DNA from: Heteronotia binoei
Taxonomy: Eukaryota
Direction: 5' to 3'
DNA length: 64,000 nucleotides
NCBI RefSeq assembly: GCF_032191835.1
Contig: NC_083239.1
Span: 20,832,001-20,896,000 of the forward strand
Below the pieces are notes generated by a model. That model worked only from the letters and a program-made list of their open reading frames with translations. It did no database searches and was not told the origin of the DNA. Below are positions 6,601 to 64,000 of the stretch, in pieces. Numbering within the stretch: the stretch's first letter is position 1; each line of letters begins with the position of its first letter. The translations under genes and the position numbers were made by a program.

Positions 6601-9600
6601 CCACTGATGAGAACGGCTGCGTATAAATGAAGCAAATAAATAGCTGAAATACTGTTTCAAGAAATGTAGCATATATATTTAATAAACAAACACAAAGTAA
6701 AGTCTCTGTGGGAAATTTGGTGCTGAAAATCCCACTTTGAGACTTCTGTTTCACAGTGCACAGACAGTCTTGGCACTGGACAGATGTGTCTTATTCCATC
6801 AAATTCCAATATTTCTCTTTGAAATTTAATTCTTCTGCTTACTCACCCAATGGACCTTAATCTGAAGCTTGTTCGATCAATAGAAAGCACTTTCACTTCC
6901 TACAAGAAAAAAGAGGATTTTTTTTCTTCCCCCCCACACTTAAAAAAAAGTTATTAAATGCCTTGCCCTTTCACAGAGCTCTATCATTTTGCAAATGCGC
7001 CTTGACATCTTAAATCCAAACAAAAGAATTTCACCTATCTCTAAGACTTCCCAGCAGAAGTACAATGGAATTCAGAAAAGGGAAGGGAACCTCAAATCCA
7101 CCTTTGTCTCCATCTATCTCTTTCCCCCAGCTTCAACATCTTCTACAACTTTCCATTTAAACATCTGCATAAATATTCTAAATTACCATCTGAATACTGA
7201 TAACATATTGCAGGCAATCCCCCTCTCGGAAGCACACCTTAATGGGGTGAGGGAGTTTCTGTGTGTCAGCAAAGCTGAAAGCAATACTGTAAGGAGTCTA
7301 AACTCCTAACAGAGTCACTCAAGGTGGAATGGTCACAGCTGAGACACCAGAGGAAGATGCATCCAACTCTGTTGGGGATCAACGGCAACACCAGCAGAAG
7401 AGAACAGACAGTTCCAGTGGTGATGGGGGCTGAAGAATACTTGAAGGGTAGCTACTAGGGGTGTGCAAAAAACATGGTATTATTTGGGTTTGGGTATACT
7501 GAAAAAAATTGATATTTCCTGATATTCCCCAAAGCCCAATACTGGTGTGGTATTTGGATTCAGTAAATATTCGAGATTGCCAAATTTTTCTTATCCAATG
7601 AACCTGAGAAGAAAAAAACTCCAAGAGGATCAGCCGGAGCTCCTGGGCTGGCACCTCTTTGCTGCTCAGTTTAAACCAAGTAGCAAAGAGGAGCCAGTCC
7701 CAGTTAAGGTGGTGCAGAGCTGTCAGTTCCTGCCACCCTGGCTAATCTTGGGTTGGCTCCTCTTTGTAGTTCAGTTTGAGCTGCAAAGAGGGGCCAACCC
7801 CAGCCAAGGGTTTTCCCCACAGACTCTGCTGAGCAGCCCAGTTTAAACAGAACTGCCCAACAGAGCCTGCCAAGTAACCGATCCTGCAGTGAATATTTTA
7901 CCCACAGGCTCGGCTGGGGTGCTGCTGGGCAGACCAGTTTAAATTGGACTGCCCAACAGAGCCGCCCTCATCCTTCATTGTTTCCAATTGTTTCCAATGG
8001 AAGGGAGAAAGGCATTTATAAGGATCATGGTCTCTTTAATTGCCTTTTGCAAGCTACAAATGAACTCCAAAGCATTTAAAGGTCTTGTGGCTCTTCACAA
8101 CTGATTACATAGATGGTATCATCAGGAAAGGTTTGGTTTTTTGGACCATGGCTTACTTTCAAGATGAAGCTTGTCCATCAGGAGATGGTTTGCACCTTAC
8201 GATGGTAGGAAAGAAATTGTTTGGCAAGAGCCTTGCAAACCTAATAAGGAGCACTTTTAACTGAATCCTATTGGGAAGTGAGACAAAAATTCAAAGCCTA
8301 GAATGATGCCAATAACTGCAGATAAGAACACTAAAGTTTTGCAGGGAGTGACACATATACTAGGTAATAACTTGCGGCAAAGTACAGAAACATAAACTAT
8401 GGAATCTGATGTCTCTATGCTAATGCACAGAGTATGGGAAACAAGCAGGAGGAACTTGGAGTCCTAATATAGGAAGGAAACTATGACCCTTATTGAAATT
8501 TGGTGAGATGAAGTAACAGTTGGAATATTAGGCCTGAGGGGTACAGCTTGTTTAAAAAGGACAGACAAATAAAGGGAGAGGAGCAGCATTATATGTAAAA
8601 GAGGTATATGCTTGTGTAGAAATATGTGAATCTGAGCATGGACGTTTCATTGAGTCTCTGGGTAGAAATAAAAGGAATAAGAAATAATACTGATATTATG
8701 GTGGGGGATCTGCTATAGACCACCAAGCCAGGCAGAGGAATTGGATGAGACACTCCTAGTACAGATTTCAAAGTTCTCAAGGAGATGGAATACAGTGTCA
8801 TGGGAGATTTCTTTTTTTTTACTAGAGTTACTTTCCAATAACTCGTTTACTGGCCATTCCTATGCAATAGTTAATGAATCCATATAATAAACTTATACTT
8901 TTTTTTAAAAAAATCACAGCTCTGAAAGAAGAGGGCAGTCAACACGTTCTCTTCTTTACAGGACAGGAGGAAGGGGAAATAAGATTACACATAGATTTGA
9001 AGGCAGGGACACAATCCTATTTGCATCATTTGGCTTTCATTTCCAAGGGGAGAAATAAGGAGGGACAAAACAGAGGCAAGTTTGGTATGGACTGGATTCC
9101 AGATCTCCAGCTTAAAAGTTCATCCATGAATTCACATTATCTCAGCAGTCTCTCCAACAACAGTGAAATAGCTCTCCTGAACAGCAGGTGGTCCTTATCC
9201 TCAGTCCAGATACTATATACGCCTTGCCATAACGCATATGGTACTTGCACTTACAAGAGTGCAGTAATGCCATCAGAGGGGTTATCTGGAAGTTACATCC
9301 CCCGCCTTGCTTGAAAGCCAATGCCTTCAGCTGCAGCCATGGGATACTTATTTGACTTTCTGTGTGCTGCAAATTAAATACGAGACCAGGAATCCCAGGA
9401 ATATCACAGCACCAAAGACAATGAGCACGGCTTCTAGCAGTTGTAGCAATTTGATCTTATTTGTCACCTTGGATCGGAAGAACTCTGCGTTCCTGTCATC
9501 AATTATTGCTGTCTCGTTGAGCCAGAGAATGGGAAAGAGGAAAGGAATCTTTACCTTCTGTAAAGCCATAATTTTTGGAGCAGGTCTCACGACTAAGTTG

Positions 9601-12600
9601 ATCTGCAGCCTACTGGCAAATTGTAATGTAAACCCTGTTGTTGGCTCAATATCTAAATAAGTCATATGCTCTTCTTTATTTGGGTTCATTCCTTCAACAC
9701 CTTCCCTGATTTCTTCACTTGCATACAATAAGTGAGGCAGTGTAATCACCACTGGCTTGCCTTGTTTACATGTACTGATGTCCAGAGCCCCAGCTATTGT
9801 GCAGTTCATTGAAATAACTTTCTCTAGGCAGAAGCAGAGGTTTTCCGGATTGATGAGGGGTGAGGCAAAAGCTCCTGGAGGCACTATGAAGCGATAGAGG
9901 GGGATTCCCTTCACAACCTGATCACTATCAAACTCCCCATAAAAGGACCTGCAGATGTCAGAAGAGAAGAAACGCAGCACATCATCCCTCCTGACAAAAG
10001 GGGGGAATGATGCCCCATCTGTCCCATTGACCATGTCACAAGAACCTTCCCAGAATGACAGGGTGCTCTTGTTTTTATAGCTCTGGATTAGTGCAGTCTT
10101 GTATATATTATCTTTTCCGCTGTAGACAGTGTAAAGGCCGTCAAGTGTTTCATTGTATGGAAGGAAAATTCCCACTTTCTTATCAGTTGGAAAGGGAACT
10201 TTCTTCAAAAAAGGATCTTCATAACCCCAGAGCAATTCATTCACTGTTCTGTTCTGAAGCAGGAATGACTTTGAAGACTTCATCCAAACATTCAACAGCA
10301 TGTGTACAAAATTATTTGGGTACAGGACAGGTGCAGTTACAAGTGCAAGGTTGACAACGGTGAAAGTGTCGTTTTCTGGCCCAATTGAAAGAGCAGGTTC
10401 AAAGCGAGCAATGTTTGGCAAGAAGTAAGACAACGTCAAGTCTGGATTTTCAGTGATATTTTGTTTGGGTAAAAACCGCACCCTGTACGTGTAAGGGCCC
10501 CTTTGTTTCAGAATTGGGCGTGACCCATTCTCCATCACTGCTGATGGGTTCTCCACATTAAAGATCCAGAACTGTCTGTAGACAGCACTTCCAGGTACAA
10601 TCCAGTTTTCATATGCAATTGTACCTTTTTCAATTATTCTTTCCTTTTTTATTGCCTTCTCAATGAAATAGTTTCCAACTGGTATCAGGGCACCTCCAAG
10701 TACAGCCACAATTGCACCAATGATTGCAGCAGCTAACAGGCCACAGTTCTGGTCACAGCCCATTCTCTTCCTTGAAGGCAAGCCTTCAAAGGTGAAACCT
10801 CTTCTGCTCCTGGGTGAAGCCTTCAAAGGTGAAGCCTCTTTTGCTCCTGGAGATTCTCTTTGAGCTCTCTTGTTCTGATGCACGGGCATCATCAGAGCAT
10901 GGGGTCATGCAGTCGGCCTGGGTCATGGGAGATTTCAATTACCCGGGTATCTGTTGGAAGTCCAACTCTGCTAAAAATGAAAGGTCAAATAAATTCCTGA
11001 CTTGTCTTGTTGACAACATCATTTCCCAGAAAGTGGAGAGGGAAACAAAGGGATCTGCTATCTTGGGCTTGATTCTCACCAAAAGGGAAAACCTGATTCT
11101 CACCAAAAGGGAAATAGTGGGCACCTTGAGTAGTAGCAACCATGCAATTTTGGAATTTACAGACCTGGGGAAAGGAAAAGCTGTACATAGACAGACATAT
11201 AGGTTGGACTTCAGGAAAGCAAATTTTGACAAAGTTATGCTGGGTAGAATCCCATGGTTAGAAATACTTAAGGAGAAGAGAGTTCAAGAGGAATGGGAGT
11301 TTGTTAAAATGGAAATATTGACACCACAATCACAAACGATTCCTATGAGAAGGAAAAACTGAAGGAGCCTAAAGAAGTCAAGGTGGCTCCATATATAGTT
11401 TTCTAAACCTAAGAACTAAAAAAAAAAAAAATCATTTAGGAACAGAAGGAGGGCCTTATAACCAAGGATGGATATAAACAAATAACCAGTGCTTGTAGAG
11501 AGAGAATTTGAAAAGCTAAAGCTCAGTATGAGCTTTTAGTACCCCATCAGTGCTTAGTTTTTGTGGCATACAATAAGTGAGGTCTACATGCTGGTACAGA
11601 GCCAGAGAACTGCTTACATGCCCATGGTAATGCTGATCACCACTTTGGGGTCAGGAAGCAATTTTCTCCAGGCCACTTTGGCCAGGGATCCTGGAGGTTT
11701 TTTGCCATCTTCTGGGAATGGAGCAGAGGTCGTGGGGCTGTGAGCCAGTTTGGTGTAGTGGTTACGTGTGCGGACTCTTATCTGGGAGAACCGGGTTTGA
11801 TTCCCCACTCCTCCACTTGCACCTGCTAGCATGGCCTTGGGTTAGCCATAGCTCTGGCGGAGGTTGTCCTTGAAAGGGCAGCTGCTGGGAGAGCCCTCTC
11901 CAGCCCCACCCACCTCACAGGGTGTCTGTTGTGGGGGAGGAAGGTAAAGGAGATTGTGAGCCGCTCTGAGACTCTTTGGAGTGGAGGGCGGGATATAAAT
12001 CCAATATCTTCTTCTTCTTCTGTGAGGTGGAGGTATTTGTGAACTTCTTCCACTGTGCAGGAGATTAGACTAGATGACCTTGGAGGCACCTTCCAACATT
12101 GTTATTCTAAGAACTGAGAGCTTTGAGTAACAGGCTACTCCAAGCACTCTGATTGGCCAACTCCATCTAAGGGCAGAAATTTTTATTAGCTGGGTGCTGA
12201 AGGGAATGGGCATTCTGGCACAATTCCTGATTGAGAGAAGAGAGACAATTCTATACCTTAATTGTTTAAAATCTGCTCTAAAAAAGACTTCAATTGAGGG
12301 TCTGAAAGAATCTTGAATCTCAGCCTGTGCTGAAAGCAGTTTTACACAGACACAAAAACTGGGACTGAGATTTGGTAAGGTTGTTGGTTAGTGAGATGAG
12401 ACTCCCATTCAGGCCAAAAGAAAAGAATTATATCTTCCAGGGAAATAATCCTTGCCCAGTTAAACAGAGAGAGTTATCTCTGGGAGAAGGAGATCCCTGG
12501 TCTGTTGTGAAAGGAAACTGCTTGAGACAACTCAAGTGCTAAACAGAAATTAAAGAATTATAAGAAAGGGAGGTACTGAAGGGAGATACCAGCCTCAAGG

Positions 12601-15600
12601 AAACAAGAGAAGAAATAGGAAACTCCATTTTAAAACATTGTAATGTTTGTAGATCCAAGCGGGCAGCTGTGTTGGTCTGAAGCAGTTGAACAAAGCAGGA
12701 GTCAAGTTGCACCTTTAAGTCCAACCAATTTTTATTTAGAACGTAAGCTTTCGTGTGCTCTTAAGCACACTTCATCAGATGAAGAATCCAGCACAGTGAG
12801 CAAAGCCATACATAGTTGAGCAAAGCCATACATAGCTGGTAGGCAGTGGCCCAGAATGTAACACAGTACAGATTTAAGAACCAATGACAGTGAAGTGAAA
12901 TTATCTGGTAGGCAGTGGTTTAAAATGTAAAATGGTACAATGATGGAATAGTAAAATTAACAAATCGAGCAAACCTTTGATCATGCTACTCAGATCAAAG
13001 GTTTGCTCAATTTGTTAATTTTACTATTCTATCATTGTACCATTTTACATTCTAAACCATTGCCTACCAGATAATTTTACTTCACTGTCATTGGTTCTTA
13101 AATCTGTACCATGTTGCATTCTGGGCCACTGCCTACCAGCTATGTATGGCTCTGCTCAGCTATGTATGGCTTTGCTCACTGTGCTGGATTCCTCGTCTGA
13201 TGAAGTGTGCTTGAGAACACACAAAAGCTTACGTTCTAAATAAAAATTGGTTCATCTTAAAGGTGCAACTTGACTCCCGCTTTGTTCAATTGTAATGTTT
13301 GGGAAGACACAGGGACAAAATATTAAGATCTCAATAACTAAGAAAATAATCTTCAGTAACTCTCATTACAATCTGTACCACCACTGATTTTTGCCTTGGT
13401 TATCAACTCCTGCTTACACCTGACCTTCTGCTGTCTTTTAAATAAAATCCTTTGTTGTGTTTGACTTTTACATTGTCTCATTTGCCATTTGAAGGGGTTC
13501 AACCCAAGTGGGCACCTTGTTCTTCCCTAAGGTTCCCTAGTTGGGCTAAAAGTCAAATTATATCTCTGTGACAGAGTGGGACAGTCAGTCTTTTAAAGAC
13601 AAAAAAGAAAACCACAGTACTTAAGGCAGCTTAGTCACAGAAGAGAACAAAATTTTGGAGCACCCTGAAATTCAAGTTAGCTCACTGCTTTACAATTCTC
13701 AGCTGCAACCCCCACACTGCTTTGTGATTCTCACCTGCACTCCACTCCCTATTTGGACTGTCATATTCCACGCCATATGCTGGCTCGTATCTTATCACTT
13801 TGCTCAACCAAGTTTGGAGCCTTCCTCCAGCCTAAGGAATCTCCTCTGTCTGAGGAAGGCTTTAAACTTGGCTGAGCAGATAAGAAACTGCTGAGAAGAG
13901 AATGGGGCTGAGCCAACAGTTCAGCAGTGCAAATGTGTGTGGCTGGCAGATGACCAATTCTGTGTCATCACTACAGATCTCATCCTTAATGGCGTGGGTC
14001 AGTCAGTCCTCAGCGATACCAAGGACTCCTCAGCCTCGTGTATCCAGACTTGAGTTAACAGAAGCTGACCAGCAGGAAAATGAGCTGCAGGCTTGTCAGG
14101 ATTCACAGCCAACAGCTGGTACAGAGCCACTACTCCCTCCAGTCCTGATTCAGCAAGTGAACCTCAGTTGGCCATTCCCAGCCCACTAGTATCACCCACA
14201 GCCCTTAGAGCACCAAAGATAGAGGCTGAGAAGAGAGCTACAGGGAAGACAGTGAAGTGCATGCCTCCTGGCCCAACACCAGCTGCTTGCTGATAACGAA
14301 GATGAGTAGTTGCAGGATTGCTTCTGAGCAGCTGTAACTTAGGCATGAGGCTATAAAAACCAGCCAAGAGAGGCTGTTATGCATGGACACAATGAGTATG
14401 ATAGATGCTAAGTCAATGACTCTGCCTTGCCTGACTTCTGAATCCGACCCTAGACTGGCCAACCCTGCCTTGTCTGATACTTAGAGCCTGCAAGCCAGTA
14501 CACTTAAGAAATTGGGATCCACCCTCTTCCACAAGATGACAAAAAGATAAGTACTTACCCTGGGAATGAAAAACTCATTTGCACTAAATTTATACAGCCA
14601 CTCATCCAGAAAGTGAAATAGAAGAGACATCATGTCATGGCCTGTTGGAACAGAAGAAGGAAAAGCTCAGAAGTTCTGGCAGTGCATCACCTTGAGCACC
14701 AGGAAGGCCTCCCAAACAAGAGGCAGGCCTCTGAGGAGGCATAAGCTGTTCTCTGATCCCATCTGAGAACCTTTCTTAGATGGGTCAGGAACCAGAACAT
14801 AGCCCCTTACACTGACTCCCTGCAGCTGGCATCTGCACAATAACAGAACATCTCTACACACACACCCCCTCACTGACTCTTTCCCCCTCCCAAACTGAAC
14901 CTGGAGGAGCATTTTAATCTCAATTTTTTTTGCTTGCTTATCTTTCATTACTGGAGTTTTTAGCAAATATACCCATACTATGAACAGGCCTGTTAGGAGA
15001 AAGCTGGGATCTCCATTCCTACTTGTATCTGACAGAACCATCAACCTGACAATGAACAAATCTATGCAATAAATTTTCTGGACATTGTTAATCCCTGTGG
15101 TTAGAGGCCTTAGCCTAAATTTTCAAGAGGGGATCATTAACTGAGACTCTGGGAACACCCTTTATAGAAAGAGAAACAACAGACTCAGTCTTTAGATGCA
15201 TAGCCATTTATTCAGAAGTACTTGCTAATACATAGTTCTAAGATCAGAATTCAATTACAATTCAGGAATCTTTATAAAGCATGAAGAATGAATACATGGT
15301 TTTATGTCTAATGTCCCATAGTGTCTCGCCTATTGTCTTTAGCAAAGCAGAGTTTTATTTATTGCAAAGCATGGTAGCATTTGGTATCTCACCTGTTTTC
15401 TAAATAATTGTCTTCACAGAGGCTGGAGGATTCAAGACCTGTTCAGGCTAGTCCTGCCTTTACTGGTCTCTTCTCCCTTCCTTTTATACCAATTTCTGAG
15501 CGATCTGACCACACAACTCAACCAGTCTCGTGTGAGGGGTTGGCTCTAAAATCCATTACTCATTGTACCAAAAGTCCCTTCCACGTCAAAACTAGATGGC

Positions 15601-33984: not shown

Positions 33985-43060
<9,076 letters not shown>

Positions 43061-47012: not shown

Positions 47013-50000
47013 TTAATCCTCAAAAATTGTCCAATGTCCTTTTATTTTCCACTCTTTCTCTACATATCTTCTGAATTTCTTCCACTCTTGGTTAAAAAGT
47101 TCTAAATCACAGTCTCTTAATTTTCTTGTTAATTTGTCCATTTCACTCCATGACATAACTTTCATAATCCAGTCCCATTTTTCTGGTATTTTTTCTTGCT
47201 TCCACAACTGCGCATACAATGTCCTAGCAGCTGAGAGCAAGTACCATATTAATGTTCTATCTTCTTTTGGAAATTTTTCCATTTGTAATCCCAGCAGAAA
47301 AGTCTCTGCCTCTTTATTGAATTCATATCCCAGGATCTTAGATATCTCTTGTTGAATCATTTGCCAAAACATTTTAGCTCTTTCACAAGTCCACCACATA
47401 TGGTAGAAAGAACCTTCATGCTTTTTACATTTCCAGCACCTATCTGGCATCTTATTGTTCATCTTTGCTAATTTTTTTGGAGTCATATACCATCTATACA
47501 TCATCTTAAAACAGTTCTCTTTAATACTATGACATGTTGCGAGTTTCATGGAATTTTTCCACAGATATTCCCAAGATTCCATCTTTATTTCTTTATTTAC
47601 ATTAATTGCCCATTTTATCATTTGAGATTTCACTACTTCATCTTCTGTAGCCCATTGTAAAAGTAATTTGTACACTTTTGAAATTAATTTCTCATTATCT
47701 CCAAGCAGAACTCTTTCCATTTCTGTTTGTTCTTTCCTTATTCCTTCAGCTTTGATATCATTCTCCATCAAACTTTTTATTTGTTGCATTTGAAACCAAT
47801 CATATTTATAGTTTAGTTCTTCTGCAGTTTTCAATTCTATTTTCCCGCTTTGTATTTTTAGTAACTGGTTGTATGATAGTTGTTTTTCCTTGACTGTTTT
47901 GGCCGTTAACTTTATCACTTCAGCCGGCACTATCCATAAAGGTCTCCTCTCATCACCATATTTCTTGTACTTTATCCACACATTTAATAAGCTACTCCTT
48001 ATATAATGGTGAGAGAAAAGACCGTCCATCTTCTTTTTTCCATAGTACAAATATGCATGCCAGCCGAATTTTTTTCCATGGCCTTCTAACATTAGAAGTT
48101 TTTTATTTAATAACGTTATCCATTCTTTTAACCATACTAAACAAATTGCTTCATGATACAGTTTCAAATCTGGTAATTGGAATCCACCTCTCTCTTTCGC
48201 ATCTATCAGGACTTTCATTTTAATTCTAGGTTTCCTCCCGGCCCACACGAATTCCGAAATTTTTCTTCGCCATTTATCAAATTGCTTAGCATCTTTCACA
48301 ATGGGGATGGTTTGAAACAGATACATAATCCTTGGTAAAATATTCATTTTTACTGCAGCTATTCTACCCAACAGTGACAAATTGAGCTTGTTCCACTTTA
48401 GCATGTCTTCTTCTATTTTACGCCATAGCTTTTCATAATTGTTCTTAAACAAATCAATATTTTTCATTGTTATCTCTACCCCTAGGTATTTTACCTTAGA
48501 GGTAACTTCACAACCCGTTAGTCTTTGTAGTTCTTGTTGTCTATTTTTCTGCATATTCTTACATAAGATTTTTGATTTGTCTTTGTTTATATAAAGTCCC
48601 GCCAACTCCCCAAACTCTTGTATTCTCATTAACAACAAAGGTGTAACTTGTAAAGGATTTTCATTTATAAACATTATATCATCTGCAAATGCTCTGTATT
48701 TATAGGTAAATCCTTTTATTTGTAGTCCTTCTAAATCTTTTTCTTCTTGAATCTGCATTAGTAAAATTTCAAGAGTCATTATAAACAGCAATGGCGAAAG
48801 CGGGCAGCCTTGTCTGGTACCTTTACTAATTTTCATTTCATCTGTAAGATCTGCGTTGATGCACAGCCTTGCACTTTGTTCAGAATATATTGCCTTTATC
48901 ATTCTTATAAAACTTTCTCCAAGCTCCATTTTTTCCATCACTGCAAACATAAAGTCCCAATTTAAATTGTCAAATGCTTTTTCTGCATCCGCAAAGAATA
49001 GCGCTACTTCCTTTTCTGGATGTCTTTCATAATATTCTACAATATTTACAACAGTTCTAATATTGTCTCTTATTTGTCTTTTGGGAAGAAAACCGGCTTG
49101 GTCCTCTTTTATAAAATTTATCAAATATTGCTTAAGACGTTCTGCCAGAATTCTTGTAAATATTTTATAATCATTGTTCAAAAGTGAAATTGGTCTGTAA
49201 TTTTTCACATTTGTAACATCTCTTTCTTCTTTAGGTATCAAAGAAATAACAGCTTCTTTCCATGTATTTGGTACCTTCCCTTTGACTCTTATTGCATTCA
49301 TCAGCTTCTGTAATTTTGGTATTAATTCATCTTTAAACATTTTAAAATACTTGGCTGTATAACCGTCTGGCCCGGGAGCTTTATCATTTTTCATCACGTT
49401 GATTGCTGCCTCAATTTCTATTTTTTCAATTGGGTCATTCAAAATTTTTCTCATATTCTCAGTTAATGGCTCAATTTTTATTTTCTGTAGATATTCATCT
49501 ATCTTTTTTCTCTTTACTTCAGCACCTTTAAACAGCTTGGCATAATACTTAAAAAATTCTCTTTTTATTCCCTCTTGAGTAACTACGTCTCTTTCATCTA
49601 TCACAATTCTATTAATTATTTTATTTTCCCTCTTTTTTTTCAGCTGCCACGCCAAGTATTTCCCCGTCTTATTTGCTCCTTCAAACGATTTTTGCTGGAG
49701 CCTTTTCAAGTTCCATTCTACTTCTTTGTTTAATAAATGTCTTAGTTGAGTTTGCAATATTGAAATTTCCCTTAGAATTTTCTTTTTCCCTGGTCTTTTC
49801 CTCAGCTCTCCTTCTTTTTTCTTTATTTCATTTTGAATATCCAGTAGTTGTTTTTCTTTTTCCCTTTTATCTTTATTGTTCAAAGTAATCAGCAACCCTC
49901 TCATTACTGCTTTATAAGCATCCCAGACCGTCTGAAAATCGATATCTTCTTTATCATTCACTTGGAAAAATTCTTTAGTTTCTTTTCCTAGGAAAGTCAC

Positions 50001-50771
50001 TGTTTCTTTGTTCTGTAGCAAGTCTTCATTCAATCTCCATCTTCTCAATCTTTTGGACAGTTTTGTAATCCACATTATTGGGTTATGGTCAGTGCCAATT
50101 TTAGGCAAAATCTCTATCTTTCTTGTTATGAGGCCTAAATCTCTGGTTCCCCATAGCATGTCAATTCTAGAAAATGTCTTATGTCTTGCAGAAAAAAAAG
50201 TATAGTCCCGCACTTCAGGGTTAAACTTTCTCCATATGTCCTCCAAATTTTCCTGTTTTACTAATTCAAAAAAAGACTTTGGCAATTTTCCTTCTTTTCC
50301 ACTATTTTTTTTCCCTCCGGATCTATCCAATGAGTTCTCAACTGTTCCATTAAAATCTCCCATTAAGAGTATTTGATCGTAGGTCAACTCATCTAGTTGT
50401 TGTGTAATGTCTTTAAAAAAAACATCTTTTGCACCATTAGGTGCATATAGTCCCAATAACAGCGTTTTTTTCCCATTTGATGTTATTTCCACTGCTACAA
50501 ATCTTCCATCCTTATCTTTAAATACCAATTTTGGCTCCAGGTCTTGTTTAATATAAAAAACTACTCCCCTTTTTTTCTGGTCAGCTAACGAAAAAAATTC
50601 CCTTCCCAATTGTTTGTTCCATAAAAATTTATAATCCTTTTGTTTAATGTGGACTTCTTGCAAACAAATTATATTACAATTTTGCTTTTTAATCCAATGA
50701 AAGGTTGCCCTTCTTTTTTGTGGTGAATTTAGTCCATTAACATTCCAAGACAATAGTTTGTAATCCATCAT
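47013..50771 (-). CDS. L1 ORF2p (APE endonuclease, reverse transcriptase, C-terminal cysteine motif), 1252 aa
   Basis: SWNVNG, CLQEVH, GDFN, SRID, TDH; YRPISLLN, DAEKAFD, QGCPLSP, FADD; CWKC...HMWWTC. Confidence 0.95.
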   Translation of the reverse strand: MMDYKLLSWNVNGLNSPQKRRATFHWIKKQNCNIICLQEVHIKQKDYKFLWNKQLGREFFSLADQKKRGVVFYIKQDLEPKLVFKDKDGRFVAVEITSNGKKTLLLGLYAPNGAKDVFFKDITQQLDELTYDQILLMGDFNGTVENSLDRSGGKKNSGKEGKLPKSFFELVKQENLEDIWRKFNPEVRDYTFFSARHKTFSRIDMLWGTRDLGLITRKIEILPKIGTDHNPIMWITKLSKRLRRWRLNEDLLQNKETVTFLGKETKEFFQVNDKEDIDFQTVWDAYKAVMRGLLITLNNKDKREKEKQLLDIQNEIKKKEGELRKRPGKKKILREISILQTQLRHLLNKEVEWNLKRLQQKSFEGANKTGKYLAWQLKKKRENKIINRIVIDERDVVTQEGIKREFFKYYAKLFKGAEVKRKKIDEYLQKIKIEPLTENMRKILNDPIEKIEIEAAINVMKNDKAPGPDGYTAKYFKMFKDELIPKLQKLMNAIRVKGKVPNTWKEAVISLIPKEERDVTNVKNYRPISLLNNDYKIFTRILAERLKQYLINFIKEDQAGFLPKRQIRDNIRTVVNIVEYYERHPEKEVALFFADAEKAFDNLNWDFMFAVMEKMELGESFIRMIKAIYSEQSARLCINADLTDEMKISKGTRQGCPLSPLLFIMTLEILLMQIQEEKDLEGLQIKGFTYKYRAFADDIMFINENPLQVTPLLLMRIQEFGELAGLYINKDKSKILCKNMQKNRQQELQRLTGCEVTSKVKYLGVEITMKNIDLFKNNYEKLWRKIEEDMLKWNKLNLSLLGRIAAVKMNILPRIMYLFQTIPIVKDAKQFDKWRRKISEFVWAGRKPRIKMKVLIDAKERGGFQLPDLKLYHEAICLVWLKEWITLLNKKLLMLEGHGKKFGWHAYLYYGKKKMDGLFSHHYIRSSLLNVWIKYKKYGDERRPLWIVPAEVIKLTAKTVKEKQLSYNQLLKIQSGKIELKTAEELNYKYDWFQMQQIKSLMENDIKAEGIRKEQTEMERVLLGDNEKLISKVYKLLLQWATEDEVVKSQMIKWAINVNKEIKMESWEYLWKNSMKLATCHSIKENCFKMMYRWYMTPKKLAKMNNKMPDRCWKCKKHEGSFYHMWWTCERAKMFWQMIQQEISKILGYEFNKEAETFLLGLQMEKFPKEDRTLIWYLLSAARTLYAQLWKQEKIPEKWDWIMKVMSWSEMDKLTRKLRDCDLELFNQEWKKFRRYVEKEWKIKGHWTIFED

Positions 50772-51523
50772 GGTGCAAATTCTTTATTTTCTTCAAAAAA
50801 TCTCCTCAGTTCTCGGGCATTTGTGATCGTGACTCTCTTCCCCTGAAGTTCAAAGCTCACACCCTCGGGGATTATCCATCTATACCTTGTGCCATTGTCT
50901 TTCAATTTTTCTGTCAACTTTTTATATGTTCTCCTGTCATTTATCACTTCTTTCGGTAGCTCCTTCATAATTCTCACTCTGCTACCTCTTACTATCAATG
51001 ATTGTTCAAAGTTTCTCTTCATAATCCTTCCCACCATTTCCTTTGTCATGAATCTTACAACCACATCTCTTGGTAAGTTATTTTTTTTGGCATATAGCGA
51101 GTTGACTCTATACATGTGATCATACATGCTTTTAGTCTTATCAGGGTCTTCTTCTAAGAATTCTGCGATTATGTTTGTTATATATCCTTTCAAATCATCA
51201 TTCTCTTCCTCAGGTACTCCTCTCAAACGTAGCTGATTTTCCATTAATTTGCAGTCGTGAATCGTCACTTTTTCTTGTACTTTCAGCAAGGTGGTATCAT
51301 GTATTTTAACTTTCTCCTCCACCTCCTGTACTTTCTTGTCTATTTTCCCAATTTGGTTTTTGAGGTCATCCACTTCTTTTTTAATCACTGTAGTAAGTTC
51401 TTCCTTCAACTCTTCCATCATTTTCTTAACTCCTTTCATAATCCTGGCTTCCATAGCCTCCATTTGGTCTTGCATTTTATCTAATGAAAGGGCTCTTGTT
51501 CGGGGCTGCCTGGGCTCTGACAT
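50768..51523 (-). CDS. L1 ORF1p (coiled coil, RRM-like and CTD), 251 aa
   Basis: Heptad-rich N-terminal half, QLRLRGVPE, PRDVVVRF, YRWIIPE; stop overlaps the ORF2 start (ATGA). Confidence 0.88.
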   Translation of the reverse strand: MSEPRQPRTRALSLDKMQDQMEAMEARIMKGVKKMMEELKEELTTVIKKEVDDLKNQIGKIDKKVQEVEEKVKIHDTTLLKVQEKVTIHDCKLMENQLRLRGVPEEENDDLKGYITNIIAEFLEEDPDKTKSMYDHMYRVNSLYAKKNNLPRDVVVRFMTKEMVGRIMKRNFEQSLIVRGSRVRIMKELPKEVINDRRTYKKLTEKLKDNGTRYRWIIPEGVSFELQGKRVTITNARELRRFFEENKEFAP

Positions 51524-55870: not shown

Positions 55871-57154
55871 ATGGAGCGTGCTAAGAAACTGGAAATCCTG
55901 AAGATGACAAAGCCACAGCTCCAGGAAGAGTGCGCAAAACAAGAGCTGGAGTGTGACAACCTGACTGTAGCAGATATGCAAGTCCTCCTGTTGGAGCATC
56001 ATCAGCATGCAGGGGCACCTGCAGAAGTGCCCCCCACCCAGTCAGAAGCAATCTTGCGGCTACAGTTGGAACTGAAGAGAATGCGTATCGAGGCGGACCG
56101 AGACCGCAGACGGGAGGAAGCTGAGATCCGCAGACAGGAGGAAAGAGAGAAAGCTGAGCTCCGCAGACAGGAGGAAAGAGAGAGGGAGCTGAGACAAGCT
56201 GAGATCCGCAGACGGGAGCAGGAAGAGCAACGTCGCCATGAGCTTGAGGTGCTACGTCTGGAAGCTGAACTAAGCAAAGAGATCCAAGTCACCCCCAAGG
56301 ACTTTGCAGGGTACAAAGAGGGAGAAGACCCCTCCATATACCTCTCCAACTTTGAGAAGGCAGCCAAACAGTGGGGGATTGCAGAGGAAGACTATATGTC
56401 TTACCTCTGTAGCAACCTGACTGGAGAACTTTCAGCCATCTATCACAGCATGCCTATGGAAGATGGGGGGATAACTTTTGCGGCCTATAAAGCCACTGTA
56501 TTTAAAAGGTTTAAACTGGGGCCAGACCACTCCCGAAAGCAGTTCAGGGGTTTGGCTCCACAAGAAGGTAAATCCTATTCTGAATGCGGGGTAATGAAGG
56601 AACAAACAGTTCCAGTGTTATTGGGCCGGGATTTGTTGGTTGGCCAGTACTCTATCAATGCTGTAACCCGCAGCCAAACCCCCAGGGGAAAGTGGGAGGA
56701 GGAAGGCAACTTTAAGGAAGCCACCTCACCACCAACCAGGGAGGGGGAAATAACCCAGGTTACTGAGGACGAAGAGAGGGCAATCACCCAGGAGGGGGAG
56801 GACCAGCCTGTCTCAAGCCCTGGAGTAGGGTGTTCCCAAGGGGAAGAGGGGTGTAGCTTTCCCCAAGTGCAGCAAGAGGTTGTCGATGTTCCTAGCAAGG
56901 AAAGGAACCTGTCTAGCATAAAGGATGTGCATGCTGAAGAGACCAAGGTGGAGAGTGGAGATTTCACAGGAGGTTCTGAGAGCAGCAAGGCTAATGTGGG
57001 CTCAGAGGAGCACATAGCTGAAGGCTTGGGGGGACGGGAGCGGTTCCAGAAGGGGGTCCGGAGCGGCCTTAGGTTGGAACCGGTTCACCAAGTAGCTGTG
57101 GATCAGGAAGTGGGATCGTCCGAGACGCTCTCAAAACAGGTCATAAGAACATAA
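55871..57154 (+). CDS. Gag-like protein with a SCAN-related capsid region, fused to a protease C-terminal remnant and spacer; truncated by the CR1 insertion
   Basis: E/R-rich coiled coil, then FAGYKEGEDPSIYLSNFEKAA...LTGEL...LGPDHSRKQFRGL, then PVLLGRDL and NAVTRSQ; the stop lies inside the CR1 tail. Confidence 0.75.
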   Translation: MERAKKLEILKMTKPQLQEECAKQELECDNLTVADMQVLLLEHHQHAGAPAEVPPTQSEAILRLQLELKRMRIEADRDRRREEAEIRRQEEREKAELRRQEERERELRQAEIRRREQEEQRRHELEVLRLEAELSKEIQVTPKDFAGYKEGEDPSIYLSNFEKAAKQWGIAEEDYMSYLCSNLTGELSAIYHSMPMEDGGITFAAYKATVFKRFKLGPDHSRKQFRGLAPQEGKSYSECGVMKEQTVPVLLGRDLLVGQYSINAVTRSQTPRGKWEEEGNFKEATSPPTREGEITQVTEDEERAITQEGEDQPVSSPGVGCSQGEEGCSFPQVQQEVVDVPSKERNLSSIKDVHAEETKVESGDFTGGSESSKANVGSEEHIAEGLGGRERFQKGVRSGLRLEPVHQVAVDQEVGSSETLSKQVIRT

Positions 57155-61561: not shown

Positions 61562-64000
61562 TTTTTTTTTTTAATTTCAAATGATTTTATTAATGAAAAT
61601 TCTGAAAATGAACATATCATAGATAAGTATAAAAGTTACATACATTAATAAAAATAACCAATACAATAACACACATTAAACATAGAAAATAAAGGAGAAA
61701 AACCAATAGTAGGCTTACATAGTTAAATATATTAAAGTAAATTATAGCCACAAAAATCTTTATATAATTTAGATTTGTTGTAAGAATTAATATAAAATGG
61801 ATCACTATCAATTTTTTCTAAGATAGGGAACCAGGTCGCTATGTACTTGGAATAAGCCTGGTAGGGGTCGATAGTGTCTAATGTTGCCTGGATTTTGTCC
61901 ATTGCTATATGGTCCCAAATTTTCAGGAGCCAGGTATCAAGGGACAAGTTGTTAGCGTTTTTCCAAGATTGGGCTACCGTTGTTTTTGCAGCTGTTAAAA
62001 GTTTGGCAATTAGAGATCTTTTCGAAGGTGACAATTTAGAACCGGGCCAATGATTAAGAAGTATCACAGTGGGGTCTTCAGGAATTATGGTATCCAATAA
62101 AGTTGAAAGGTGAGAGCAGATTGCAGTCCAAAATGGTCTTATTTGGGGGCAATCCCACCAGCAATGAATGTAGGAGGCTTTGAGACCACAGTCTCTCCAA
62201 CAATCAGGGGAGTTCGAGGTGACCATATGTGAAAGTTGGGTAGGAGTAAGGTACCAACGGGCCATAAGTTTGAAGTTCTGTTGTGAAATATTTATTATGT
62301 TGGAGTGTAGAATTTCGCTAGCCCAGATAGAGTCCCATTGGTCTGGAGAAAGTATGGTCCCGCAGTCCCTATGCCAAAGGGCCATGTAAGAGGGAAGTGA
62401 GGATTCCAATTTGGTAAGAAGGATACGATATATTCGTGAAATAAGCCCCTTTGACTGCACGTTATCTTGCAAATGGAGAATGTTCAAAATCTGTCGTTGG
62501 GCGGGAAAGTGACGATTTTAGTTGGGTGTCTTGGAGAAGATGTCTAATTTGGAAATATTGGAACCAAGGCAATGGGGTTAGTAATTTTTGGTCTAATTTA
62601 TCTTTGGGTAGAATTTGCCTAGAAGAGGAAAGGAGGTCAAAAAGGAAGACAATTGAGGAGTCTCGCCAAGTTTTAAAAGAAGAGGGGAGTTGGGCCGGGA
62701 GAAACCATTTTTGACCGATAAACGAAGAAATGATAGAAAAACCTGGGGCAAGGTAAGAACGTTCTGAATCCCATGTAGAAAGAAGTGCCTTAAGAAATGG
62801 GTTTACAAAATGCCACAAAGGACGGTCATTTTTCTTGAGCCATAATAGTTCGTAATATTTAAGGGGAGTAAAATGGGCCTCTTTAATAAGTGCCCATGCT
62901 GGGGGAGGGCGTTGATATAAAATTTTAGTCATTTGGGAGAGAATAACAGCTTTGTAGTAGCGAGTAATGTCTGGGACCGCCAGACCTCCTTTTGCTCTAG
63001 ATCTGCAAATAGTAGTTAGTTTGATTCTGGCTTTTTTGTACTTCCAAATGAAGGAAGTCAAGGTTTGTTGCCAGGAGTTTAACATCTTTTGAGGTATCAC
63101 AATGGGAAGGGCCCGAAACAGATATAACAAACCTGGGAAAATAAAGGATTTGACCGTTTGGATTCTTTCCATCCAGGACAGTTGCAATTTGTCCCACTGT
63201 TTCAAAGTAATAGAAATGTCTGATAAAGTGGCACTATAATTTGTCTTTAATAAATTGGAGAGATTTAAAGGGATTTTTAGCCCTAAATATGGCCAGTTTT
63301 CGGTAACCCAAAGGAAGGGATATTTGGTGGATATTTCTTTCTTTGAGTTAGGAAAAATATTGATTGGGTAAAGAATAGATTTAGAATGGTTGACTTGGAG
63401 TCCAGAGAGTTTACCAAAATTGTCTAAAAGAGTGGAGATAGCGTCTAAGGATTGCAGAGGATTTGAAATATATAAAACTATGTCATCGGCAAATAAGCTA
63501 ATTTTAAATGTGGAGCCTTGAACCGACAAGCCTGGGATTTCAGGAGAAAGACGAATCAGGTTTGCGAACGGTTCAATAACCAATGCAAATAAAACCGGAG
63601 AGAGGGGACAGCCTTGGTGTGTCCCTCTCTCCAGACTGAACGCAGAGGACTGTTGACCGTTAATTTGTAAAAAGGCTGATGGGTCCAAATAAAGGAAATC
63701 AATAACCTTCATAAATTTTGGGCCAAAGCCCATATGGTATAGGACCTTGCGAAGAAAAAGTGGTTCTACGCTATCAAAGGCCTTTTCAATGTCCAGGGCT
63801 AAAATACAAGATTCAAAGTTTTGGAAGGTACAATATTGAATTAGGTTAATTGTTTGTCTCGTATTGTCTGTAATGTCACGGTTTGGTATAAATCCTGATT
63901 GATTTATATGGATGTAGGAACCAATGATTTTGTTCAGTCTAGCTGTTAAGATGGACGTAAATAACTTATAGTCGTTATTAAGTAAAGAAATAGGGCGATA
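61562..64000 (-). mobile_element. Second L1 family, 3' portion of ORF2 (runs off the window), one frameshift near 62470
   Basis: Open frame from 64000 (YRPISLLNNDYK...DIEKAFD...QGCPLSP...FADD) to about 62470, continuing in ORF 61732-62487 (CWRDC..HCWWDC); AATAAA and A11 tail at 61562-61572. Confidence 0.9.

What the first reader, a model, noticed from the sequence alone, without database searches (positions are those of the whole stretch)
8812..10921. Intact, full-length, intronless CD36 retrogene hidden in an intron of the archease gene ZBTB8OS
Seen: an uninterrupted 471-codon CD36-like ORF with both TM helices, the N-terminal Cys3/Cys7 and one C-terminal Cys, all six ectodomain Cys, the RGPYTYR site and many N-glycosylation sequons, plus UTRs, an AGTAAA signal, an A9 tail and a TSD. 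Known: vertebrate CD36 is a multi-exon gene at an unrelated locus, and the ZBTB8OS-RBBP4-SYNC block has no CD36 in mammals. Inference: this is an extra, potentially functional lipid or fatty-acid scavenger receptor gene created by retroposition. Either it is very young, or it has been kept intact by selection while the surrounding CR1 decayed. I recall, unverified, that single-exon CD36 copies have been noted in another lizard genome, so this may belong to a repeatedly expanding squamate CD36 retrogene family.
Basis: partly seen in the sequence, partly recalled or inferred. Interest (0 to 1): 0.9.

Follow-up and report, generated by a model that had tools for sequence, protein, structure and literature searches.

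The report
Selectively kept CD36 retrogene in gecko
A Bynoe's gecko (Heteronotia binoei) carries an old, intronless second copy of the fatty-acid/scavenger receptor gene CD36, made from spliced mRNA and dropped into an intron of the archease gene. Its reading frame has been kept intact by selection for tens of millions of years, but whether and where it is expressed is still not shown.

Summary
Window 8812-10921 (minus strand) is a 2110-nt processed copy of CD36 mRNA. It has a leader, a 471-codon ORF (9348-10763), a 3'UTR with AGTAAA, an A9 tail and a perfect 15-bp target-site duplication. It sits in sense orientation in a ZBTB8OS (archease) intron of Heteronotia binoei. The multi-exon parent lies on another chromosome of the same assembly, and all 12 coding-exon junctions plus a 3'UTR intron are precisely removed.

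The copy is old. It is 92.3% nt and 89% aa identical to the parent, the UTRs differ by about 21-24%, and its own branch has dS of about 0.10.

The ORF is constrained:
- Branch omega is 0.49, against 0.24 background; omega = 1 is rejected (p = 0.008).
- No indels, against about 13 expected.
- No stops (neutral P about 0.009).
- Replacements avoid invariant CD36 sites (3 against 11.7 expected).
- CDS polymorphism is lower than in the 3'UTR.

Expression is unresolved. Total-RNA contigs also cover the flanks, and two cDNA runs show almost no reads.

NCBI already annotates the locus as a 514-aa protein, so it is not hidden. I found no support for a wider squamate CD36 retrogene family. This is a new member of a known kind, of moderate interest.

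The parts
8797..8811 (.). Target-site duplication, copy next to the poly(A) end (GTCATGGGAGATTTC)
   Evidence: A perfect 15-bp direct repeat of 10922-10936.
8812..8820 (-). Poly(A) tail remnant (A9 in sense, T9 on the + strand)
   Evidence: It begins exactly where homology to the parent 3'UTR ends. Its length varies between individuals (+T or +TTT in X2 and X1).
8812..9347 (-). 3'UTR of the retrocopy (536 nt including the tail), with AGTAAA at 8846-8851
   Evidence: It aligns to the parent's separate 3'UTR exon (L001 about 86997-87479) at p = 0.208 with 9 indel events. The parent intron that starts right after the stop codon (TAA|GTAAGC...TAG|GTATC) is absent here. The parent's AATAAA is AGTAAA in the copy.
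9348..10763 (-). CD36 coding sequence: 471 codons plus TAA, with no intron
   Evidence: Pfam CD36 E = 3e-138 and human CD36 E = 1e-196. It is colinear with the 12 coding exons of the parent. Branch omega is 0.49, significantly below 1. There are no indels or stops.
10764..10921 (-). 5' leader derived from the parent 5'UTR. It holds a retro-specific tandem duplication of about 33 nt (about 10781-10850) and a retro-specific upstream ATG (10890-10892) that gives the 514-aa NCBI model
   Evidence: Alignments. The parent has GTGGTG and a TAG where the copy has ATGATG and CAG. In two other individuals, SNP 10831 turns leader codon 21 into TAA. The first 24 nt or so have no match within 3 kb upstream of the parent CDS.
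10922..10936 (.). Target-site duplication, copy at the 5' end
   Evidence: Identical to 8797-8811. In sense orientation the target reads TAATT|GAAATC, close to the L1 endonuclease preference TT|AAAA (the consensus is from established knowledge).
8500..8796 (+). Left part of the older, decayed LINE (CR1-like by motif) that received the insertion
   Evidence: Removing the insert and one TSD copy restores the frame ...KEMEYSVMGDFNYPGICWKSN.... Further upstream there are stops and a frame change. Pfam gave no hit to the right-hand ORF, so 'CR1-like' rests only on the remembered motifs CYRPP and GDFNxPxICW.
10937..11362 (+). Right part of the same LINE fragment (open frame continuing from the TSD)
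   Evidence: It is unrelated to the L1 ORF2 elsewhere in the window.
14559..14642 (-). ZBTB8OS (archease) exon upstream of the host intron
   Evidence: The NCBI archease gene range covers the locus on the same strand.
6846..6899 (-). ZBTB8OS (archease) exon downstream of the host intron
   Evidence: tblastn at 78% over 18 aa (EVKVLSIDRTSFRLRSIG).

Best explanation
This is a processed retrocopy of the Heteronotia binoei CD36 mRNA. It was fully spliced and polyadenylated, and was inserted by an L1-type target-primed reverse transcription event into a CR1-like LINE fragment. That fragment lies inside a 7.7-kb intron of ZBTB8OS, and the copy has the same orientation as the host gene. The insertion happened after the Heteronotia lineage split from the Gekko and Paroedura lineages, on the order of tens of millions of years ago.

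Since then the 471-codon ORF has evolved under purifying selection. That selection is relaxed about two-fold relative to the parent gene. The copy is therefore best read as a protein-coding retrogene: a second class-B scavenger receptor with CD36 topology. It keeps two terminal TM helices, a glycosylated ectodomain with three disulfides, and palmitoylatable terminal cysteines.

Shown here: the origin, structure and age of the copy, the constraint on its ORF, and its presence with an intact ORF in independent individuals.

Inferred: that it is translated and acts as a CD36-like lipid or ligand receptor. How it is transcribed is not known. The candidates are its own promoter or the host ZBTB8OS promoter through splicing into the leader.
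For: Origin. The window is H. binoei GCA_032191835.1, chromosome CM063341.1. The parent CD36 (P0001) is an 82-kb, 12-coding-exon gene on CM063332.1. The insert aligns block by block to every exon with the introns removed, including the intron just after the stop codon. The A9 tail starts at the parent's 3' end, and there is a 15-bp TSD with a TT|GAAA target.

Age.
- Retro against parent: 92.3% nt, dN 0.052, dS 0.19.
- 3'UTR p = 0.208 and 5'UTR p = 0.236.
- 5'UTR changes polarise to 12 in the retro and 3 in the parent per 100 nt.
- The retro is sister to the parent (UFboot 97 in the codon tree, 89/85 in the protein tree), with Gekko, Paroedura and another gekkonid outside.

Constraint.
- In a GY94 branch model, omega is 0.49 on the retro branch against 0.24 background. 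Omega = 1 is rejected (2dlnL = 7.06, p = 0.008). My M0 likelihood equals IQ-TREE's.
- The retro branch carries 30 synonymous and 38 nonsynonymous changes.
- There are no indels in 1416 nt, against about 12.9 expected from the UTR indel rate (P = 2.5e-6). P(no stop) is about 0.009 at d = 0.10.
- Only 3 of the 37 replacements hit sites invariant in 108 CD36 orthologues, against 11.7 expected (P < 2e-4).
- All 9 Cys and 9 of 10 sequons are kept.

Recent constraint. Contigs from two other studies bridge both junctions and carry an intact ORF. In X1 the CDS has 5 differences in 1416 nt (3 synonymous) and no indels. The 3'UTR has 10 differences in 536 nt plus indels (Fisher p = 0.0017). The only stop-creating SNP lies in the non-CD36 leader.
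Against: No discrete transcript is demonstrated.
- In two total-RNA (metatranscriptomic) runs, contigs cover the flanking intron and LINE as well as the insert.
- The roughly two-fold higher depth over the CDS is explained by 31-mers shared with the parent mRNA: 6-18% of words in those contigs, and none in the 3'UTR contig, which sits at flank depth in X2.
- Two H. binoei cDNA runs, each sampled at about 6% (about 10 million reads), give 0 and about 2-3 reads on the insert.

Other points against a working gene:
- Omega on the retro branch is significantly higher than background (p = 0.012).
- A few replacements hit nearly invariant residues (K384S, F345L, Y97F, K425N).
- The canonical AATAAA has decayed to AGTAAA.
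- The leader has acquired an upstream ATG.
- No orthologous copy in a second species could be examined, so constraint is inferred from one lineage only.
Confidence: 0.72

Rival explanations
1. A formerly functional retrogene that has recently lost expression or constraint and is now drifting. It is still intact only because too little time has passed for a disabling mutation.
For: - Omega of 0.49 is twice the background.
- Radical changes occur at nearly invariant sites: K384S, F345L, K425N.
- The reference allele carries two derived nonsynonymous CpG-to-TpG polymorphisms, S109L and T155M.
- The poly(A) signal is weakened.
- Two cDNA libraries show essentially no reads.
Against: Between the reference and the individuals in X1 and X2, neutral flanks differ by about 0.9-1.9% and carry 9 indel events. 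The CDS differs by 0.35% with no indel and no stop. That argues constraint persisted into the recent past. The cDNA tissues are unknown and only 6% of the reads were sampled.
Confidence: 0.18
2. An ordinary processed pseudogene that was never functional and whose ORF is open by chance.
For: Most retrocopies are dead on arrival. It lies inside a repeat in an intron and has no demonstrated promoter or transcript.
Against: Neutral divergence on its branch is about 0.10-0.12 per site. Under neutrality, P(no stop) is about 0.009 and P(no indel) is about 2.5e-6, or 1.6e-3 under a very conservative split. Omega = 1 is rejected. Replacements avoid invariant sites. The UTRs of the same insert have accumulated about 11 indel events.
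Confidence: 0.04
3. An assembly artefact or cDNA contamination, not a real genomic insertion.
For: Intronless copies with a poly(A) tail can come from contaminating cDNA.
Against: - The copy has a 15-bp TSD, and removing it restores a LINE reading frame.
- It is 8% (CDS) to more than 20% (UTR) diverged from the parent mRNA.
- Contigs from two independent studies bridge both junctions: X1 8726-9666 and 10365-10977, X2 8139-9398 and 10508-10982.
- DNA runs of the species hold it.
Confidence: 0.01

Closest known systems
Vertebrate CD36 (platelet glycoprotein 4, SCARB3), the multi-exon parent gene; human structure PDB 5lgd
   Same: The copy aligns full-length and colinearly, with 89% aa identity to the H. 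binoei parent and an E = 1e-196 match to human CD36. It shares the Pfam CD36 domain, the two terminal TM segments, C3/C7 and a C-terminal Cys, six ectodomain Cys, the RGPYTYR motif, and 9 of the parent's 10 N-glycosylation sequons.
   Different: - It is intronless and sits on another chromosome, nested in ZBTB8OS.
- It carries 37 lineage-specific replacements and its protein tip branch is about 3.7 times longer than the parent's.
- It has lost the N46 sequon.
- It has K384S, F345L and K425N at otherwise nearly invariant positions.
- Its cytoplasmic tail is altered (R466S, A467T).
- It has no inherited promoter.
L1-mediated processed retrocopies that became retrogenes (the class surveyed in mammals, e.g. 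PMC4772013 and PMC2584115; I saw only their titles and abstracts)
   Same: All parental introns are removed. A poly(A) tail sits at the parental cleavage site, and there is a 15-bp TSD with a TT|GAAA target. The ORF is intact with omega below 1. The copy lies in sense orientation in a host-gene intron. An apparently intact L1-type element with ORF1 and ORF2 is present in the same window.
   Different: This is a gecko, not a mammal. Expression and its route (own promoter or host-gene fusion) are not shown. I found no paper describing a CD36 retrogene.
SCARB1 and SCARB2/LIMP-2, the other class-B scavenger receptors
   Same: They share the same Pfam family and fold (LIMP-2 chains match at E of about 1e-72).
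   Different: They are far more distant than CD36. The retrocopy is unambiguously a CD36 derivative, not a SCARB1 or SCARB2 derivative.

Membership tests
CD36 / class-B scavenger receptor family (Pfam PF01130) | Full-length match to the family profile | tested here: met
   PF01130 at E = 3e-138, residues 14-461 on model positions 1-462 of 463. Human CD36 5lgd aligns 1-471 to 1-472 at E = 1e-196.
CD36 / class-B scavenger receptor family (Pfam PF01130) | Hairpin topology: one TM helix at each end with short cytoplasmic tails | tested here: met
   Exactly two hydrophobic segments (Kyte-Doolittle 19-residue mean above 1.6), at residues 3-35 and 436-470. This is a sequence-level prediction only.
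CD36 / class-B scavenger receptor family (Pfam PF01130) | Six conserved ectodomain cysteines (three disulfides) and terminal palmitoylatable cysteines | tested here: met
   Cys at 242, 271, 310, 312, 321 and 332, plus C3, C7 and C465. The set is identical to the parent's.
CD36 / class-B scavenger receptor family (Pfam PF01130) | Binds and takes up long-chain fatty acids, oxidised lipoproteins and similar ligands | not testable with these tools
   Needs expression and uptake assays.
Processed (L1-type) retrocopy | All parental introns precisely absent, with an intron-containing parent elsewhere in the same genome | tested here: met
   Twelve coding exons of L001 map colinearly and the exact CDS was recovered. 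The 3'UTR intron directly after the stop codon is also removed. The parent is on CM063332.1 and the copy on CM063341.1.
Processed (L1-type) retrocopy | Poly(A) tail at the mRNA 3' end, flanked by target-site duplications at an A/T-rich nick site | tested here: met
   The A9 tail starts where parent homology ends. There is a perfect 15-bp TSD, the target reads TAATT|GAAATC, and the empty site restores a LINE ORF.
Functional retrogene | Intact ORF with purifying selection on the retrocopy's own branch | tested here: met
   - Omega is 0.49, and omega = 1 is rejected at p = 0.008.
- No indels against about 12.9 expected; P(no stop) is about 0.009.
- Replacements avoid invariant sites, P < 2e-4.
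- CDS diversity is below that of the 3'UTR, p = 0.0017.
Functional retrogene | Transcribed as a discrete mRNA | tested here: inconclusive
   Total-RNA contigs cover the insert and its flanks alike. The excess depth over the CDS is explained by words shared with the parent mRNA. Two cDNA runs at 6% sampling give about 0 reads.
Functional retrogene | Conserved at the orthologous site, with an open frame, in related species | not testable with these tools
   No genome of a closer relative was reachable. Only runs labelled as the same organism hold the DNA. The gene tree places the event after the split from Gekko and Paroedura.

The most novel reading that the evidence does not exclude
Heteronotia geckos have kept a lineage-specific second CD36 receptor for roughly 40-50 million years. 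It was born by L1 retroposition and nested in sense orientation in ZBTB8OS. It evolves about twice as fast as the parent. It would be expressed from the host gene or a recruited promoter in a narrow tissue such as germline, yolk or skin lipid handling, with a shifted ligand or partner specificity. Replacements at otherwise invariant K384, F345 and K425, changes in the apex helix region 141-155, and the loss of one glycan hint at such a shift.
Probability: 0.45. Interest if true: 0.55.

Novelty: new member of a known kind. Interest (0 to 1): 0.45.

Why it matters
CD36 is a central fatty-acid, lipoprotein and pathogen receptor, and is normally a single multi-exon gene in tetrapods. A selectively maintained retro-duplicate offers a natural experiment on which parts of CD36 can change while the protein stays useful. 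It is also a clean, datable example of L1-type retrogene birth in a squamate, where retrogenes are far less studied than in mammals.

It has practical consequences too:
- The NCBI 514-aa model probably carries a spurious 43-residue N-terminal extension. That leader is interrupted by a stop in other individuals.
- RNA-seq quantification of CD36 in this species must separate the two copies.

If expression is never found, it remains an instructive case of strong sequence constraint without a known transcript.

Tried and rejected
1. The step-up in RNA-contig depth over the CDS (X1 278 to 613-687, X2 24 to 57) first looked like retro-specific expression. I rejected this. The contigs with raised depth share 6-18% of their 31-mers with the parent mRNA and break at those shared runs. 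The X2 contig holding the 3'UTR shares none and sits at flank depth.

2. I tested whether replacements cluster in the ligand-binding apex region (6 changes in residues 141-155). The scan statistic gives P = 0.06, which is not significant.

3. I looked for a squamate CD36 retrogene family. Lerista (506 aa), Pantherophis 'CD36-like' and Candoia 'CD36-like' are all 33-44 kb multi-exon genes. Only three were checked.

4. Pfam gave nothing for the flanking LINE ORF even at E = 10, and it does not resemble the window's L1 ORF2. The CR1 label therefore rests on remembered motifs.

5. The first 24 nt or so of the insert have no match in the 3 kb upstream of the parent CDS or in another gekkonid's cDNA leader. 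Their origin is unexplained, though an upstream non-coding exon is possible because the parent has CAG| at the boundary.

6. Earlier scan notes were blank.

7. Literature searches for a CD36 retrogene or retrocopy found nothing relevant.

8. ARAGORN found no tRNA in the SINE-like repeat at 11.7-12.1 kb.

9. I could not check the empty site in other geckos, because I had no usable reference for their archease proteins.


Full report
**What is there**

The minus strand of the window carries an uninterrupted ORF at 9348-10763. It has 471 codons from MGCDQNCG to the stop, and can be extended to 514 codons from an upstream ATG at 10892. Pfam's CD36 family matches end to end (E = 3e-138). Human CD36 (PDB 5lgd) aligns residue 1 to 471 (E = 1e-196).

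The protein keeps the main CD36 features:
- exactly two hydrophobic segments, one at each end;
- C3, C7, six ectodomain cysteines and C465;
- the RGPYTYR motif;
- 9 N-glycosylation sequons.

**Where it comes from**

An exact look-up shows that the 514-aa product is already in NCBI/UniRef (P0122). It is encoded on Heteronotia binoei GCA_032191835.1, chromosome CM063341.1, inside the gene range of a 206-aa archease protein on the same strand.

Archease exons map on the minus strand at about 20542-20462, 20016-19993, 18246-18109 and 14642-14559. The CD36 copy follows, and then come exons at 6899-6846, 5587-5552 and 3759-3652. The copy therefore lies in sense orientation in a 7.7-kb ZBTB8OS intron.

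**It is a processed retrocopy**

The same assembly holds a conventional CD36 gene (P0001) on chromosome CM063332.1. It spans 82 kb. I recovered its exact CDS from 12 coding exons.

The 2110-nt insert (8812-10921) aligns block by block to those exons with every intron removed. The parent also has an intron immediately after its stop codon (TAA|GTAAGC...TTTCTAG|GTATC). In the copy the stop codon is followed directly by GTATCC..., so this intron was spliced out too.

The A9 tail starts exactly where homology with the parent 3'UTR ends. The parent's AATAAA is AGTAAA in the copy.

A perfect 15-bp duplication (GTCATGGGAGATTTC) lies at 8797-8811 and 10922-10936. Removing the insert and one duplicate restores a LINE endonuclease-like frame (...SVMGDFNYPGICW...). 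In sense orientation the target reads TAATT|GAAATC, close to the L1 endonuclease preference (the consensus is from established knowledge). The receiving LINE is decayed, with stops and a frame change in the left flank. By remembered motifs it looks CR1-like, but Pfam gave no hit.

An apparently intact L1-type element lies elsewhere in the window at 47013-51523. It has a 251-aa ORF1 and a 1252-aa ORF2 with endonuclease and reverse transcriptase domains. The machinery that makes such copies therefore exists in this genome.

**It is real**

Contigs from two independent studies bridge both junctions (X1: 8726-9666 and 10365-10977; X2: 8139-9398 and 10508-10982). DNA runs of the species also hold the stretch. 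Together with the TSD and the divergence from the parent, this excludes misassembly or cDNA contamination.

**It is old**

| Measure | Value |
|---|---|
| CDS identity to parent | 92.3% nt, 89.2% aa |
| dN / dS (NG86) | 0.052 / 0.19 |
| 3'UTR difference | 20.8%, 9 indel events |
| 5'UTR difference | 23.6%, including a retro-specific tandem duplication of about 33 nt |

With three gecko outgroups, 12 of the 15 polarisable differences in the well-aligned 100 nt of the 5'UTR arose on the retro lineage. That agrees with a dS of about 0.10 on the retro branch.

In a codon tree the copy is sister to the H. binoei parent (UFboot 97). Another gekkonid cDNA, Paroedura and Eublepharis fall outside. A 16-taxon protein tree agrees (89/85) and also places Gekko kuhli outside.

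The parent's own branch since the split is about 0.56 of its path back to the Paroedura split. Using divergence dates I remember rather than measured, that puts the insertion at roughly 40-50 million years ago. This figure is an inference.

**Its reading frame has been under selection**

1. I fitted a GY94 F3x4 branch model of my own. Its one-ratio likelihood reproduces IQ-TREE's (-3870.257). It gives omega = 0.49 on the retro branch against 0.24 elsewhere. The parent branch alone is 0.24. Omega = 1 is rejected (2dlnL = 7.06, p = 0.008), and so is equality with the background (p = 0.012).
2. Parsimony counts are 30 synonymous and 38 nonsynonymous changes on the retro branch, against 23 and 18 on the parent branch.
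3. All five gecko sequences are 471 codons long with no gap. The copy's UTRs carry 11 indel events in 604 aligned nt. At that rate about 12.9 indels were expected in the CDS (P(0) = 2.5e-6, or 1.6e-3 under a deliberately conservative split). In simulations, neutral substitution at d = 0.10 leaves the ORF open only 0.9% of the time.
4. Only 3 of the 37 retro-specific replacements fall on the 150 sites that are invariant in 108 tetrapod CD36 proteins. Random nonsynonymous mutation would put 11.7 there (P < 2e-4).
5. Constraint appears to reach the recent past.
   - The X1 individual differs from the reference at 5 of 1416 CDS sites (3 synonymous, 2 nonsynonymous) with no indel.
   - It differs at 10 of 536 3'UTR sites and 36 of 3713 non-coding sites overall, with 9 indel events (Fisher p = 0.0017 and 0.033).
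   - Both nonsynonymous differences (S109L, T155M) are CpG transitions derived in the reference.
6. The one stop-creating polymorphism (10831 G>T, seen in X1 and X2) lies in the 43-codon leader, at its codon 21. The conserved unit is therefore the canonical 471-codon ORF, not the 514-aa database model. The leader's ATG is itself retro-specific: the parent has GTGGTG and an in-frame TAG there.

**What is not shown**

Expression is unresolved.
- Four metatranscriptomic RNA runs hold 58-74% of the stretch's words.
- When two of them were laid on the window, contigs covered the flanking intron and LINE as well as the insert.
- The roughly two-fold higher depth over the CDS coincides with contigs that share 6-18% of their 31-mers with the parent mRNA and that break at those shared runs.
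- The X2 contig covering the 3'UTR shares none and has flank depth.
- This pattern fits host pre-mRNA or carried-over DNA plus parent-mRNA words. It does not demonstrate a discrete transcript.
- Two cDNA runs of the same species, each read at about 6% (10 million reads), gave 0 and about 2-3 reads on the insert. Their tissues are unknown.

The elevated omega and the replacements at nearly invariant residues (K384S, F345L, Y97F, K425N) fit either relaxed constraint or a shift in function. An apparent cluster of changes at residues 141-155 is not significant (P = 0.06).

**Comparison with what is known**

By every sequence-level defining feature tested, the protein belongs to the CD36 family. 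The locus meets all structural criteria of an L1-type processed retrocopy.

As a functional retrogene, it meets the selection criterion. The transcription criterion is inconclusive, and orthologous conservation could not be tested.

I found no paper describing a CD36 retrogene. The three other squamate CD36 or CD36-like models I checked are multi-exon genes, so the suggested wider retrogene family is unsupported.

**Verdict**

This is an old CD36 retrogene in a gecko, kept intact by selection and already present in annotation, but not recognised there as a retrogene or as being under constraint. It is a new member of a well-known kind.

| Reading | Probability |
|---|---|
| Protein-coding retrogene still under constraint | about 0.72 |
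| Formerly functional, now drifting | about 0.18 |
| ORF intact by chance | about 0.04 |
| Assembly or contamination artefact | about 0.01 |

Interest is moderate (0.45).

Noticed in passing
window 47013-51523 (minus strand): An apparently intact L1-type LINE. ORF1 is 251 aa with a weak, below-cutoff match to the L1 Transposase_22 RBD domain. It overlaps ORF2, which is 1252 aa with Exo_endo_phos and RVT_1 domains. It may be a recently active element, and it is the kind of machinery that makes poly(A)/TSD retrocopies.
   Followed up: partly
window about 11742-12020: A SINE-like repeat upstream of the retrocopy has enormous depth in all four RNA runs (about 1.7e5 in X1 and up to 180x in the sampled cDNA reads). 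It shows many 'goes back' joints and loose ends, so it is an abundant dispersed repeat present in many transcripts. ARAGORN calls no tRNA there.
   Followed up: partly
window 10831: A G>T polymorphism in two individuals from two studies puts a TAA at codon 21 of the 43-codon N-terminal extension used by the 514-aa database model. The annotated start is therefore probably wrong.
   Followed up: yes
window 10898-10921 (first 24 nt or so of the insert, sense orientation): The 5'-most 24 nt or so of the retrocopy match nothing within 3 kb upstream of the parent CDS or in another gekkonid's cDNA leader. The parent has a CAG| acceptor-like site exactly where homology starts. The retrocopy may preserve a distant non-coding first exon of CD36.
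   Followed up: partly
window 7730-7780: A 51-bp deletion relative to the reference appears in contigs of both X1 and X2. It is an intronic indel polymorphism in the ZBTB8OS intron.
   Followed up: no
window 41957-43033 (minus strand): A 358-aa open exon with an intermediate-filament (PF00038) match.
   Followed up: no
window 62465-63733 (minus) and 55871-57151 (plus): There is a further reverse-transcriptase fragment (RVT_1, E = 1e-14) and a 427-aa ORF with no Pfam match. The window is rich in LINE-derived sequence.
   Followed up: no
window 11417-11432 (sense = minus strand): A T14 tract followed by AG lies about 500 nt upstream of the retrocopy's 5' end, in the sense orientation. It is a potential strong splice acceptor through which ZBTB8OS transcripts could splice toward the CD36 ORF. 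This was not tested.
   Followed up: no
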